Origin: Ruditapes philippinarum
Taxonomy: Eukaryota
Reading direction: 5' to 3'
Length of the DNA: 64,000 nucleotides
Assembly: GCF_026571515.1 (NCBI RefSeq)
Contig: NW_026860156.1
Span: 62,001-126,000 of the forward strand
Below, piece after piece: positions 43,472 through 49,502 of the stretch (its first letter is position 1; every line of letters begins with the position of its first letter). The position numbers and the translations under genes are program-made. Under the pieces are notes generated by a model that worked only from the letters and a program-made list of their open reading frames with translations, did not search any database and was not told where the DNA came from.

Positions 43472-43692
43472 ATCAAAATCGTAACAAAACGAGTAAATGC
43501 AAGAAGGATTCCAAAGAGAAGAACAAGCCCCCAGAAACAGTATTAGCTGATGTACATACAAAGGAAGTACAAAGACTTGAGGCCCTGTGTGAGTCGAGGA
43601 CAAAACAACTTAACATGGTGAAACTTCAGTTACAGACAAGTAATCTGGCTTTCGATGGCATGTCCTGTATTGTCAACTACCTGGCTCATGAT
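43472..43692 (+). CDS. MTUS1: Common coding exon: start of the conserved MTUS/toucan-type coiled coil, phase 1 to 0
   Basis: Acceptor tttttgcttcag, donor GAT|gtaagt; peptide KEVQRLEALCESRTKQLNMVKLQLQTSNLAFDGMSCIVNYLAHD. Confidence 0.9.
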
Positions 43693-44045
43693 GTAAGTTA
43701 CAGGTGTATTTGTATACTTCAAAATAATAAAGGTTATATCATGCACAAATACTTTGAATTAATAATATTAAACAGTCTTGTCAGGTGTAAAAACAAAAAC
43801 AAAAAAGCAAGTAGATGCAATTTAAAATGTAACAAATTACATTTTGTAATCTTGAAAAAATCAAATCATAAGTTTTCATCAGTAATGTTTGCACTTTATT
43901 ATAAGGCAAATTTGATAAATACAAATAATTATGTATCTGTTTCTAGTTCATATAACATTATTACCTTTATTGATTTAGTTTAAAATTAGTATGTTGTGTT
44001 CCCAGTAAAAATGGCTTAAAACAGGGTTGTTTGATTGTCAATTGA

Positions 44046-44448: not shown

Positions 44449-44590
44449 ACTTTTATATTTCTTAGCTCTTTATACACAAAGATGATAAGTAATATAGTAC
44501 TTAATAAGTATGTTCATTACATCATGAAATGATTGTCTACATTTAAGTGTTTTCATATCAAAAGATGTGCATTATATAACCTTTATCTGA

Positions 44591-44732: not shown

Positions 44733-46398
44733 AAATAAAACAATTCTACATTTATTTATCATTTATGTTAATGCACTTCTTATGTTTTAAGAATTGATTT
44801 GAATTTCAGTGTGACCATGACATAGTGTTACCCAATTGCTTTTGTAGCTTTAAAGTTATTACTGTAAAAATCTTCGAGATTTGTGGTAATGAATTATTGG
44901 TGAATAATGACGGTTAAGATTTAATCAGCCTGAAAGGTTTTTGATTGAAATGATTTTGTCTGCAGTTACTATAATAATCTGTTGGGAAGTGGTTGGGGGA
45001 ATTATAGGAATATTTACTGAATGTTAAAATAGAAATGTCAACTTTCTATCATGCTTTAAATTTGTGGTTAAATTGAATGATTTTGGCGCAGTTACTTATA
45101 GAAAGGTGTTTTTGTTCTGATGTGATTGCCAAATATTACTGAAAGTGTCAAATCATCTTAAATACTGTGGCAATATAAATTTACAAATTCAATACCAATC
45201 TTTTGCATGTTTTAACAGAAATTAATGACAACTGTTGATATATTTCTCTTTTCCTTATATAATTTGCATTAACAATAGCTTAATATAAATGAGAAAGTTC
45301 AAGAATAATACACAAGAAGACATTTTCATAACTTTTTCTACAAATTTATCTATAAATTATGACTGCTCCTGCATAATCTTTTTGCAAAAATGAAATCCGA
45401 AGTCAAACAACAATGTAGATTAACAAAATGGTATTCACAATTAACTTCCTTATAAGCACTTAAGAATGGAACTAAGAGAGGTAACTAGGATAATTTAAGC
45501 CCTCATATATGTTAAAATATATCGAGTTCATTTGATTGCTTTAAAGCTGTTACTTTTTTTTCTCATGAGAAAATTTGAGTATTTTAAATGCTAATATGAT
45601 AAAAAAAAGTAAACTTTCAGACATAATGTTTCAAGTTATCTTATCTAATGTTTGGTAATAAACACAGTTTTTCTTCGCACATTGGTATTTTTAATGCATG
45701 TTGCATATCTTGTAGTATTTATGAGACAAAATTTTAAGATTTTAATCATGTTATTTCATTTTTTTATGATATGAAAAACATAAAGTTTTTAAATATTGAT
45801 GAAACTTTTTGATTTATCTTAAGATTTATTGTCAATAAAATAAGAGTCTTGAGAAAATTCTGTCTTCTTTTGGAAAAAAAAGAAAATGAGGAACATTTAT
45901 GTTTATGTTACTTTGGCTGACCTCTGCATGTAAACTGCTTAATAGCTTTTGCTGAGTCTTTCTTACTAGGGAAGAGCAAGGCCAGGCAACAAAATCCCTG
46001 CAGTCTGATTATGTTTTTTGTTTCTTTTATGGCACTCCGGTAGCTCAATTTTATAATTGTCTTAAAGAAATCTTTAAACTACAAAGATATAATTTGCCTA
46101 ATGTTATAGACTCTTAGCTTTGGTTTACATGATTGTCAAAGGCTAATGTGATTATACTTAATTTGCTTATGAACCATTTAGGCTAAATAAGCATCTAACA
46201 TTTCACACTTAAAAACTAATAATAATAAAAGAGATAGTCCAAATTTGTTTAGAAATTAAAGCTGATAACAGTTATTGAGAACCATATTACAATTATTTTC
46301 TTTATGGATAAGGTAGAAGACTTGTATCTAATTTTGCATGAAGATTTAATGAGTTTCAACTTTGCAATATGTAGTTGAAACAATTTTAACATCCGCAG

Positions 46399-46639
46399 CT
46401 TGATGGGTTTTCGTGCCCCGTACTTCTTAAAGAAATGGAATGTCTCAGAGAAGAGCAGGCGGTTGACAGTGGCATTATATGTGCCTTGGAGGGCCATAAA
46501 ACAAGTCTTGAGGAGATAGTTACACATCTTAAAGTGCAACATAAAGAATATTTGAATAGTTTGGAGGTGGAAACAGAAAAATCCCTGCAGTACCAGAGAG
46601 AGTCTTTAGAGAAAGAGCACCAGAGGGAGCTAAATTCCA
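46399..46639 (+). CDS. MTUS1: Duplicated coiled-coil exon variant a (241 nt; putative mutually exclusive exon), phase 0 to 1
   Basis: Acceptor atccgcag, donor A|gtgagt; LDGFSCPVLLKE...EHQRELNS. Confidence 0.8.
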
Positions 46640-46683
46640 GTGAGTTTTTATTATGTTGTGTGTTTTTTATTTTTTTTCCGCAG

Positions 46684-46924
46684 CTCGATGGTTTCTCAGC
46701 CCCACAACTTGTTAAAGAGACAGAAAGCCTTAAAGAAGAGATTAACAATGAGAAAACTCAAATAACAGGGTTGCAGGAACAAAAGTCCAATCTGGAAGAA
46801 ATAATCGCAAACCTCAAGGAGCAGCATAAAGATTATGTAAATAGTCTCGAAGCTGAGAGTGAGAAATCACTGAAATATCAGAGAGACACTTTAATAAGTG
46901 AACATCAGGATATGATGCGCGTCT
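46684..46924 (+). CDS. MTUS1: Duplicated coiled-coil exon variant b (241 nt; putative mutually exclusive exon), phase 0 to 1
   Basis: Acceptor tttttttccgcag, donor T|gtgagt; LDGFSAPQLVKE...EHQDMMRV. Confidence 0.85.
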
Positions 46925-49340
46925 GTGAGTCCAATTTTCATTTTCCCCTAAAATTTTGTACCTCATGTAAACATAGAACTAACATTTTTTGGTAGAGGTG
47001 TTCTATAAAAATCTTGTAGAAATCTAGAGAACTAACACTTTGGTCCTATATCTATCTCATAGTAACTTGGTAATCTAACAAATGGTAGAATTTTGTTTTG
47101 TTTGTACCTTGTATTACAAGATTTCAGTCTTTCTGTCTCTTTCTTACCTTGTAAGCCAGATGTTAGCGAGGACATTAGGCTTTTTGTCCTCAGATACAAA
47201 ACAAATCTGTCATTAATTATGTGACAGTTTAGTGGAAGACTTAATGACTAAGAAGATTATTCATCTACTACTGGTCAGTTGGTAGTAACTTACTAAACTT
47301 GGTTAGTCCTAGAAAAAATTAAGGGGCACTTATCCTTTCGTTTAACTGAAATATAATCACAAGCACTGGAACATTATAACATGTATAATAGTCAAAACAA
47401 TAGATACATTAAACAAACATTAGTCTTTGGCACAATTGCCCTACTCTTTAGGTCCAATGAGAAGGCCTGAATTTGAAATATTCTGCCAGTCTATTTTGCA
47501 ATAGAGTTTATTTAACCAATAATTTTAAAGTAGCATCTGTGTGGATAACTTGGTGCAAGACTAATTATTAAGTCAGACACTAGCTCCTGTGTCACTCTTC
47601 CGTCTATTGGGTGGTTTAGCTTTACCACTACCAACACAAAGGCTATCAAGTCTTTTACCATTTACTCAATAATTGCATGTGGAGAAGTTGATAATGAGTT
47701 ACTTGTAGAATAAGACTCATTCATCATCCAACTAGAGCAGTTAACTGTCAGCGAATGATGTTCACATGAACCTGTAACCTGTAAGGTAAAGAATAAAAAA
47801 AAAAAAAGAATTAGGCACCAAAATAGCTTAAAATCTGTTACTGCCTTCAAAACTGTAGATATAACTGCTATTATTTCTCTCTTTAACATTTTTATTAGTC
47901 TTTATGTTCTTGTGTTCCACTGGTTTTGGGAATTTTTCATATATTAATTTATGTACTCATCCAAATAATTATATTCCTGTATTGTAGAATTCAATATTAG
48001 ATAACCTATAATGTGTAGATATCATTTAATGAAATACAGTAATTTAAATGATTTTAGTATACTTTCAGTCCATGGTTAACTTTTTATAAAACTTCAATAA
48101 AATAACATTATCCACTTTAAACTTTCAAGAGAAAAAGTAGAATATTTTGACCAGGAAATTATTAAGATACTTAATATAGACTTTGATATTACATTCTTCA
48201 AAACTTAATATTCTTACTATAGCTATTTTACAGATTTTCAGTATAACAAAGGGAAGTAATTGTAATATATTTGTATTGCTTGATATGTAAGAGTTACCTT
48301 TTCTTAGTTGTACCGTTCCAGTATGATGTGTATCAAATGCCACTCAGATAAGATAGGAACCTTGTAGATAAAGAATTTGATAAAGGAATCAACCTAGATA
48401 GTTTCATAATTAAACATCTATATCAATTTAAACTACTCACAGAAAGTTCAAGTTTAATGAAATGATTTAAGCGTCACTGACAAAACACTGTGTTATCTGA
48501 TTGCATTTTTTATATGAAATTCTATGATTATTTACTGTAAGTCTCTGAAGGAACATTGATAAATTTTACCCACTATGTTCTTTCAGAATGCCATGGATTG
48601 TATTTTAAATAAAGCCAAATTGATTGTAAGTGATGTATAAAGTAAAAAAAAACAGGGGATGTTTAAAGTAAAAACAGGTGACAGTTTTGTTAGTTTACTA
48701 CATCAGTTTTAACATCATTTTGTGACTGTTTCACATGAAACAATAGGCCAAATTCTTACAAAAACTGATTTTTATCTGGCTAATATTGTATACTTGCTAA
48801 GACTAATTATAGGTCTTTTAGCAGATTTTCAAGAAGTGATGCCCACCCACTAAAACTAAATGGGACTGTTTATAAATGGGTACAAATGACACTTTGTTTA
48901 TAGGGGATTTATACAATCAATACTGTGCATTTTTACTGTAATGTAGAATTTGAATTAAAACACATTTTGACTATTGTATCTGTCTCTTTACTTACTATAC
49001 AACTACAATAATCTTACACTGAGCTGATTCTCTTTTATTTTCATACCATCTTCATTTAAAAACAACAACATGAGATATTTAGCGTGTTTGTACCTTCATT
49101 TACCCTTGATTGGGTTGATAGGGTAGAGGTCACAGAATCTAAAAATAGATTTTTCTACTTTGCTTCATACAAATGTCATAATTTTTTTTATATTTGTCAA
49201 ATAAGCATGGACTTTTAACACAATGGTATATTCTTGTTTTACATAATAATTAAGTATGTAATGTCAATTTTCCCTCCCTTTCATCTTATTTTCTAAAAGA
49301 GTGTACAAATTGTGTTATATTTTGATGATTTGTTTTACAG

Positions 49341-49502
49341 TGAAAGAACAGAAAGCGTCAGAGATAAATGAGATAAGAAAATCTCACGAGGTATATATAG
49401 CCCGGTTAGAAGAAGAACATGCTGTTGCTGTAAAGAAGTTGCAGTTTCTACATGGTGAAAGTATCAAAACACTACAGACCAAACAAGAAAATCAGATGGA
49501 AG
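49341..49502 (+). CDS. MTUS1: Coiled-coil coding exon (KEQKASEINEIRKSHEVYIARLEEEHAVAVKKLQFLHGESIKTLQTKQENQME), phase 1 to 1
   Basis: Acceptor tgttttacag, donor G|gtatat; H-x-x-x-[IL] periodicity resembling MTUS coiled coils. Confidence 0.85.

What the first reader, a model, noticed from the sequence alone, without database searches (positions are those of the whole stretch)
46399..46924. Tandem-duplicated, probably mutually exclusive coiled-coil exons separated by a 44-nt spacer
Seen: two exons of exactly 241 nt, both phase 0 to 1, both with ccgcag acceptors and gtgagt donors. Their 80-aa peptides align without gaps at 42/80 identity by hand count. Splicing a to b would frameshift, and the 44-nt intron is very short. 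Established: very short donor-to-branch-point spacing is a classic steric mechanism for mutual exclusion (e.g. alpha-tropomyosin). Inference: the gene swaps an 80-aa segment of its coiled coil. Variant a has three Cys absent from b, which could alter partner specificity or redox behaviour. I know of no such exon pair in vertebrate MTUS1/2.
Basis: partly seen in the sequence, partly recalled or inferred. Interest (0 to 1): 0.85.

Follow-up and report, generated by a model that had tools for sequence, protein, structure and literature searches.

The report
Either/or exon pair, clam microtubule gene
A Manila clam microtubule-associated gene has two old tandem copies of one 241-base exon, 44 bases apart, and almost certainly uses one or the other per mRNA as its hard-clam counterpart is annotated to do; this is real but ordinary in kind.

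Summary
There are two 241-nt exons (46399-46639 and 46684-46924). Both have ccgcag acceptors and gtgagt donors, they lie 44 nt apart, and their peptides match at 42/80 residues.

The genome is Ruditapes philippinarum. The gene is the RefSeq "CAP-Gly domain-containing linker protein 1-like" gene, an MTUS1/2-type coiled-coil protein with an N-terminal CAP-Gly domain.

- **This species:** all four RefSeq isoforms use exon b only. Exon a is unannotated.
- **Hard clam (Mercenaria mercenaria):** RefSeq isoforms X1 and X2, both 2006 aa, differ only inside this 80-aa segment. X1 carries the b type and X2 the a type.
- **Mactra antiquata:** the gene model uses an a-type exon.
- **Other species:** two further unnamed species carry both types as intact 241-nt exons.
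- **Age and constraint:** synonymous sites between a and b are saturated. Exon a is as conserved between clam genera as the rest of the protein.
- **Frame:** joining a to b, or skipping both, gives an early stop.

So this is a conserved pair of mutually exclusive exons, with b probably the default. The short-spacer (steric) enforcement fits the sequence but is untested.

The Cys/redox idea is weak.

The scan has already noted many such exon pairs elsewhere in this genome.

The parts
43472..43692 (+). Upstream constitutive exon (221 nt, ends in phase 0, donor gtaagt)
   Evidence: It matches RefSeq protein P0014 residues 1283-1357.
46393..46398 (+). Acceptor of exon a (ccgcag), behind a weak polypyrimidine tract (50% pyrimidines at -23 to -4)
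46399..46639 (+). Exon a (241 nt, phase 0 to 1). Not in any RefSeq isoform of this species. It is 69/80 identical to the a-type exon of Mercenaria isoform X2.
46640..46683 (+). 44-nt spacer. It holds the donor of a (gtgagt), the pyrimidine tract (85% pyrimidines) and the acceptor of b (ccgcag). Its possible branch-point adenines are at 46650, 46653 and 46669, at most 29 nt from the donor of a.
46684..46924 (+). Exon b (241 nt, phase 0 to 1). Used in all four RefSeq isoforms X1-X4 of this species.
46925..46930 (+). Donor of exon b (gtgagt)
49341..49502 (+). Downstream constitutive exon (162 nt, entered in phase 1)

Best explanation
Exons a and b are an old tandem duplication of one 241-nt exon of the clam CAP-Gly/MTUS-like microtubule-associated gene. 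Each mRNA carries exactly one of them. This gives two proteins that differ only in an 80-residue stretch of the long C-terminal helix (coiled coil).

Exon b has the much stronger acceptor and is probably the default. Exon a is probably a minor or tissue-limited alternative.

Two things would enforce exclusivity.

1. The spacer is only 44 nt, so any branch point for b within it lies at most 29 nt from the donor of a. That is under the roughly 50-nt limit for U1 and U2 to sit together, so a cannot be spliced to b, and committing to one exon blocks the other. This step is inferred.
2. The exon length is 3n+1, so including both exons or neither gives an early stop and presumably nonsense-mediated decay. 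The stops are shown. The decay is inferred.
For: - **Sequence anatomy:**
- **Gene identity:** RefSeq proteins of Ruditapes philippinarum match the window's exons at 98-100% for most (tblastn alignments that run past exon ends score lower), with a CAP-Gly hit at E 6e-19.
- **Mercenaria isoforms:** X1 (P0047) and X2 (P0046), both 2006 aa, differ only at residues 1407-1481. X1 is b-type (72/80 identical to exon b here) and X2 is a-type (69/80 identical to exon a here), with identical junctions on both sides.
- **Mactra:** the Mactra antiquata model P0028 carries an a-type exon.
- **Unnamed species:** two species have both types as open 80-codon units, each followed by xGT-GAG, which reads as a donor.
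- **Tree:** the b clade, including the mactrid-like b, has support 89/85, and a and b separate in 98% of bootstrap trees.
- **Selection, a against b:** codon positions 1, 2 and 3 are identical at 55, 57 and 32 of 80. pS is 0.79 (saturated) and pN is 0.31.
- **Selection, between genera:** exon a is 86% identical between Ruditapes and Mercenaria, the median for 80-aa windows of this protein. Exon b is 90%.
- **Spacer length:** it is 44 or 45 nt in a second species.
- **Spacer is not coding:** the frame through it is broken in the 45-nt variant and by a stop in a third species.
- **Steric limit:** about 50 nt between the 5' splice site and the branch point (PMC7969005).
Against:
- All four RefSeq isoforms of this species use b only.
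- Two protein searches found no transcript-like fragment joining exon a to its flanking exons.
- The Mercenaria isoforms are automatic models whose read support I could not inspect.
- The roughly 50-nt limit comes from vertebrate and viral systems, and some animals splice introns this short. No data for bivalves were examined.
Confidence: 0.72

Rival explanations
1. Exon a is no longer used in Ruditapes philippinarum. It would be a recently silenced copy that still looks intact, and the gene here makes only the b form.
For: All four RefSeq isoforms use b. The acceptor of exon a has a poor pyrimidine tract, 50% against 85% for b. No exon-a-containing fragment from this species turned up in the protein collection.
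Against: - Exon a keeps an open frame, its exact 241-nt length, and both splice signals.
- It is 86% identical to the Mercenaria a exon that is annotated as used. That is the same conservation as the rest of the protein.
- The codon-position pattern shows selection on the protein.
Confidence: 0.12
2. The exons are mutually exclusive only because of the reading frame. The 44-nt spacer can be spliced out, a+b transcripts are made, and nonsense-mediated decay removes them. The short spacer would then be a leftover of the duplication, not the enforcing element.
For: Joining a to b gives a stop after 9 codons, and skipping both gives an immediate stop. Very short introns are spliced in some animals (my own knowledge, not tested here).
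Against: The spacer is held at 44-45 nt in a second species. Every adenine in it is at most 29 nt from the donor of a, well under the published limit of about 50 nt.
Confidence: 0.12
3. The whole stretch 46399-46924 is a single 526-nt exon with an internal repeat, and the spacer is translated (15 extra residues).
For: 46390-46992 is one open frame, because a plus the spacer is 95 codons. One sequence from a second species (P0001) is also open across the spacer.
Against: - No annotated protein in any species holds both segments.
- The frame across the spacer is broken in the 45-nt variant of the second species and by a stop in a third species.
- The spacer would encode a Phe/Cys/Leu-rich hydrophobic stretch in the middle of a charged helix.
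- It carries consensus donor and acceptor signals.
Confidence: 0.03

Closest known systems
Mercenaria mercenaria 'CAP-Gly domain-containing linker protein 1-like', RefSeq isoforms X1 (XP_053398860) and X2 (XP_053398862)
   Same: It is the orthologous gene, 86.5% identical overall. The same 80-aa segment sits at the same junctions, b-type in X1 and a-type in X2, and the two isoforms are otherwise identical.
   Different: There the switch is in the automatic annotation. In Ruditapes only b is annotated. No paper describing either was found.
Steric mutually exclusive exons: alpha-tropomyosin exons 2/3 (Smith and Nadal-Ginard 1989, as cited in PMC7969005) and OGDH exons 4a/4b (PMC7969005)
   Same: The branch point for the downstream exon lies too close to the donor of the upstream exon, under about 50 nt, so the two cannot be joined.
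   Different: In those genes the intron is longer and the branch point lies unusually far from the acceptor. Here the whole intron is 44 nt, so any branch point inside it is too close. No branch point was mapped here.
Tandem duplicated exon substitutions catalogued in human (PMC9741552, PMC8373072)
   Same: These are homologous neighbouring exons of equal length and phase, ancient, under purifying selection in both copies, and often in helices or coiled coils.
   Different: This pair is specific to a bivalve lineage. MTUS1, MTUS2 and CLIP1 do not appear in the main text (MTUS) or in the two held supplementary files (all three) of PMC9741552.
Vertebrate MTUS1 (ATIP) and MTUS2 (TIP150)
   Same: Molluscan and brachiopod orthologues of this gene are named MTUS1 or MTUS2 homologues by NCBI. 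They share the precomputed Pfam family PF27558 in the C-terminal helical part.
   Different: The clam protein also has an N-terminal CAP-Gly domain. I found no report of a duplicated exon pair in the vertebrate genes.

Membership tests
Tandem-duplicated mutually exclusive exons | Two neighbouring exons that are homologous to each other | tested here: met
   42/80 aa and 144/241 nt identical, BLASTP E 2e-28. They are the only two copies in the genome.
Tandem-duplicated mutually exclusive exons | Same length and same phase, with intact splice signals on both | tested here: met
   Both are 241 nt, phase 0 to 1, with ccgcag and gtgagt.
Tandem-duplicated mutually exclusive exons | Mature transcripts of this genome carry exactly one of the two | not testable with these tools
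RefSeq isoforms here show b only. The orthologue in Mercenaria has one isoform with a and one with b.
Tandem-duplicated mutually exclusive exons | Both copies kept by purifying selection | tested here: met
   Codon positions 1, 2 and 3 are identical at 55, 57 and 32 of 80, with pN 0.31 against pS 0.79. Between Ruditapes and Mercenaria, a is 86% and b is 90% identical, against a protein median of 86%. Both types are intact in four species.
Steric (short-intron) enforcement of mutual exclusion | The distance from the donor of the first exon to the branch point of the second is below about 50 nt | tested here: inconclusive
   The spacer is 44 nt and its adenines lie 10, 13 and 29 nt from the donor. 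The limit is taken from PMC7969005. No branch point was mapped, and the limit has not been shown for bivalves.
Frame-based enforcement (double inclusion or double skipping gives a premature stop) | The exon length is not a multiple of three, and stops appear in the shifted frame | tested here: met
   241 = 3n+1. Joining a to b gives a stop after 9 codons, and skipping both gives TGA at once. Decay of such mRNAs was not tested.
CAP-Gly / MTUS-type microtubule-associated proteins | A CAP-Gly domain plus an MTUS-type C-terminal helical region | tested here: met
   PF01302 at E 6e-19 on P0002. PF27558 is precomputed for P0002 and for 18 orthologues, several of them named MTUS1 or MTUS2 homologue. 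PF27558 was not reproduced by my own scan, because the local library gave only CAP-Gly.

The most novel reading that the evidence does not exclude
The a/b switch, kept since before venerid and mactrid clams split, retunes the core of the dimeric coiled coil of a microtubule plus-end protein. Venerid a-type exons have Gln instead of a hydrophobic residue at core position 20, and a Gly at position 25. The two forms might therefore pair with different partners or refuse to heterodimerise. The choice might be set by direct U1/U2 competition on the 44-nt spacer, perhaps helped by a 19/21-nt pairing between exon b and its downstream intron.
Probability: 0.15. Interest if true: 0.45.

Novelty: new member of a known kind. 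Interest (0 to 1): 0.3.

Why it matters
- **Annotation:** it adds an unannotated coding exon, and so a second protein form, to a Manila clam gene.
- **Experiment:** the whole intron between the alternatives is shorter than the accepted minimum spacing of the splicing machinery. A simple minigene test in which the spacer is lengthened would therefore be informative.
- **Biology:** it points to an 80-residue part of the MTUS-type coiled coil that evolution treats as a tunable module.

It does not change what is known about how such exon switches arise or work.

Tried and rejected
- **Contigs:** The contigs, species and spacer DNA behind P0001, P0004, P0015, P0016 and P0026 could not be read. That P0004 and P0026 (1445 nt), and P0015 and P0016 (6377 nt), share a contig is inferred only from equal contig lengths.
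- **Protein searches for exon a joined to flanking exons:** these found only genomic-style open frames.
- **Metagenome scan:** it gave one locus, L005, from a distant species with a single copy of the exon in 4.2 kb.
- **Timing of the duplication:** 80 columns give little power. Independent duplication in the mactrid line is not rejected (AU p 0.22). Independent duplication in venerids is borderline (p 0.044). One clade of all a-types is not rejected (p 0.34).
- **Docking/selector RNA structures:** I found only one pairing above shuffles, with no orthologous DNA to test it.
- **Rbfox-type hexamer near exon a:** its count across the window is at chance.
- **Joined models:** I did not search with a joined (spliced) model. 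Exons were searched one by one by reference, and full-length comparisons used database proteins.
- **dN/dS between species:** not possible, because no orthologous DNA was available.

Full report
**What is there**

- Exon a runs 46399-46639 and exon b runs 46684-46924. Each is 241 nt, preceded by ccgcag and followed by gtgagt.
- The spacer between them is 44 nt.
- The two 80-residue translations align without gaps at 42/80 identical residues. BLASTP gives E 2e-28.
- A six-frame search of the whole 1.4-Gb assembly finds only these two copies.
- The upstream exon (43472-43692) ends in phase 0. The downstream exon (49341-49502) is entered in phase 1.
- Reading b after a gives a stop after nine codons. 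Skipping both makes TGA the first codon downstream. A productive mRNA therefore needs exactly one of the two.
Exon a plus the spacer is 285 nt, and 46390-46992 is one open frame, so retaining the spacer would also stay in frame.

**Which gene**

An HMMER search with the exon b peptide against 1.84 billion representatives gave ten hits. One is a 1958-aa RefSeq protein of Ruditapes philippinarum, the Manila clam, named "CAP-Gly domain-containing linker protein 1-like isoform X2".

- Isoform X1 of that gene (P0014) maps onto the window's exons at 98-100% for most; tblastn alignments that run past exon ends score lower.
- It has a CAP-Gly domain (PF01302, E 6e-19).
- Orthologues in other molluscs and a brachiopod are named MTUS1 or MTUS2 homologues, restin homologue or CLIP1-like. 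They share the precomputed Pfam family PF27558.
- All four RefSeq isoforms of the Manila clam (X1-X4) carry exon b. None carries exon a.

**Evidence from relatives**

- **Mercenaria mercenaria.** The hard clam belongs to the same family, Veneridae, and has seven RefSeq isoforms. X1 and X2 are both 2006 aa and differ at 37 positions, all between residues 1407 and 1481, which is inside this exon. X1 has the b type (72/80 identical to exon b here). X2 has the a type (69/80 identical to exon a here). The flanking sequence is the same on both sides. This is what mutually exclusive use looks like in an annotation.
- **Mactra antiquata.** This species is in Mactridae, same order. Its model carries an a-type exon.
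- **Unnamed species.** Open frames from Logan assemblies show two further species with both types. One ("sp2") has a and b 44 nt apart in one open frame (P0001). A variant of it has 45 nt, which breaks the frame (P0015, P0016). Another ("sp3", close to Mactra) has an a-type (P0026) and a b-type (P0004), probably on one 1445-nt contig, with a stop straight after the donor of a.
- **Donor conservation.** In almost every homologue listed the 80th codon is followed by xGT, i.e. a donor at the same place; in P0006 the frame ends at that codon.
- **Distant species.** A metagenome contig from a distant species has a single copy in 4.2 kb.

**Age and selection**

- In a tree of the 80-aa segments, all b-types, including the mactrid-like one, form a clade (support 89/85). 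Venerid a-types form a clade (85/83), and so do the mactrid a-types (98/94).
- The a and b labels separate in 98% of bootstrap trees. The positions of Mya, Dreissena and others are unresolved.
- Four positions are fixed differently in all a-types and all b-types. At three of them (50, 52, 64) the a-type agrees with most outgroups, so b looks like the derived copy.
- AU tests have little power on 80 columns. Independent duplication in venerids is borderline rejected (p 0.044). Independent duplication in the mactrid line is not rejected (p 0.22). A single duplication before the venerid-mactrid split is therefore favoured but not proven.
- Within the window, a and b are identical at 55, 57 and 32 of 80 first, second and third codon positions. 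pS is 0.79 (saturated) and pN is 0.31. This is the signature of long purifying selection on both copies.
- Between Ruditapes and Mercenaria the whole protein is 86.5% identical, and the median 80-aa window is 86%. Exon a is 86% and exon b is 90%. Exon a is therefore not decaying.

**Mechanism**

*Shown.* The frame arithmetic and the stops are shown. So is the 44-nt spacer, which is 44-45 nt in a second species. The adenines in the spacer lie 10, 13 and 29 nt from the donor of a.

*Established elsewhere.* U1 at a 5' splice site and U2 at a branch point need roughly 50 nt between them. This is the basis of exclusion in alpha-tropomyosin and OGDH (PMC7969005).

*Inferred.* Exon a cannot be spliced to exon b, and recognition of one blocks the other. 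Double-inclusion or double-skipping products, if made, would be lost to nonsense-mediated decay.

*Default exon.* The acceptor of b sits behind an 85% pyrimidine tract, and that of a behind a 50% tract. This fits b as the default and a as a regulated or minor choice, and it may explain why RefSeq lists only b here.

**Protein consequence**

- AlphaFold with a 12-row alignment predicts exon a as one helix, residues 7-79, with mean pLDDT 93.9.
- Hydrophobic residues follow a heptad pattern from about residue 9 to residue 55.
- The two types differ most in residues 12-35. Venerid a-types have Gln at core position 20 and Gly at position 25. A change in coiled-coil stability or partner choice is a reasonable guess, but it is untested.
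Cys6 is ancestral and also occurs in outgroups and in one b-type exon. Cys15 and Cys28 are limited to Ruditapes and Mercenaria.

**What could not be done**

- Use of exon a in the Manila clam itself is therefore inferred, not shown.
- No search used a joined exon model.

**Comparison and verdict**

This is a further example of tandem-duplicated mutually exclusive exons, a well-known class (PMC9741552, PMC8373072). Its closest mechanistic relatives are the steric cases.

The orthologous switch already sits in the Mercenaria RefSeq models. I found no paper on it, and no such pair reported for vertebrate MTUS1/2.

The scan's own notes list 24 mutually-exclusive-exon findings across the windows it has noted, all eight shown being in this genome. 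The kind is common here.

It is real, conserved and neatly built, but ordinary in kind.

Noticed in passing
window 46714-46734 and 47122-47142: A 21-nt stretch inside exon b is 19/21 complementary (14 contiguous) to the intron about 200 nt past the donor of b. None of 100 shuffles of the introns reached 19. It could be an RNA stem that hides exon b, or chance.
   Followed up: partly
window 46335-46340: A TGCATG hexamer (Rbfox type) lies 59 nt upstream of the acceptor of exon a. The count of this hexamer across the window is at chance level.
   Followed up: partly
P0004 (unnamed species, b-type exon): The read-through after this b-type exon (CEFLFCC...) resembles the start of the a-b spacer of the window (SEFLLCC...), not the intron after exon b here. 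This could mean a third tandem copy in that species, or a retained ancestral flank.
   Followed up: no
window 43727-43747 and 44566-44586: A 21-nt inverted repeat, 95% complementary with arms 818 nt apart, lies in the intron upstream of exon a. It may be the ends of a small transposon.
   Followed up: no
P0018 and P0003 (JGI and ENA contigs): These are clam DNA in metagenome collections. P0018 has exon b identical to the window but different flanks, and its source names it a bacterial 'septal ring factor EnvC', which is a misannotation of a eukaryotic coiled-coil exon.
   Followed up: no
RefSeq isoforms P0014, P0002, P0013, P0011: The four annotated isoforms differ by 5-19 residues elsewhere in the protein (1965, 1958, 1953 and 1946 aa), so the gene has other small alternative segments.
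   Followed up: no
P0030 and P0057 (Dreissena polymorpha): The orthologue appears on two different very large contigs with slightly different sequences (78/80 in this exon). They could be two loci or two haplotypes.
   Followed up: no
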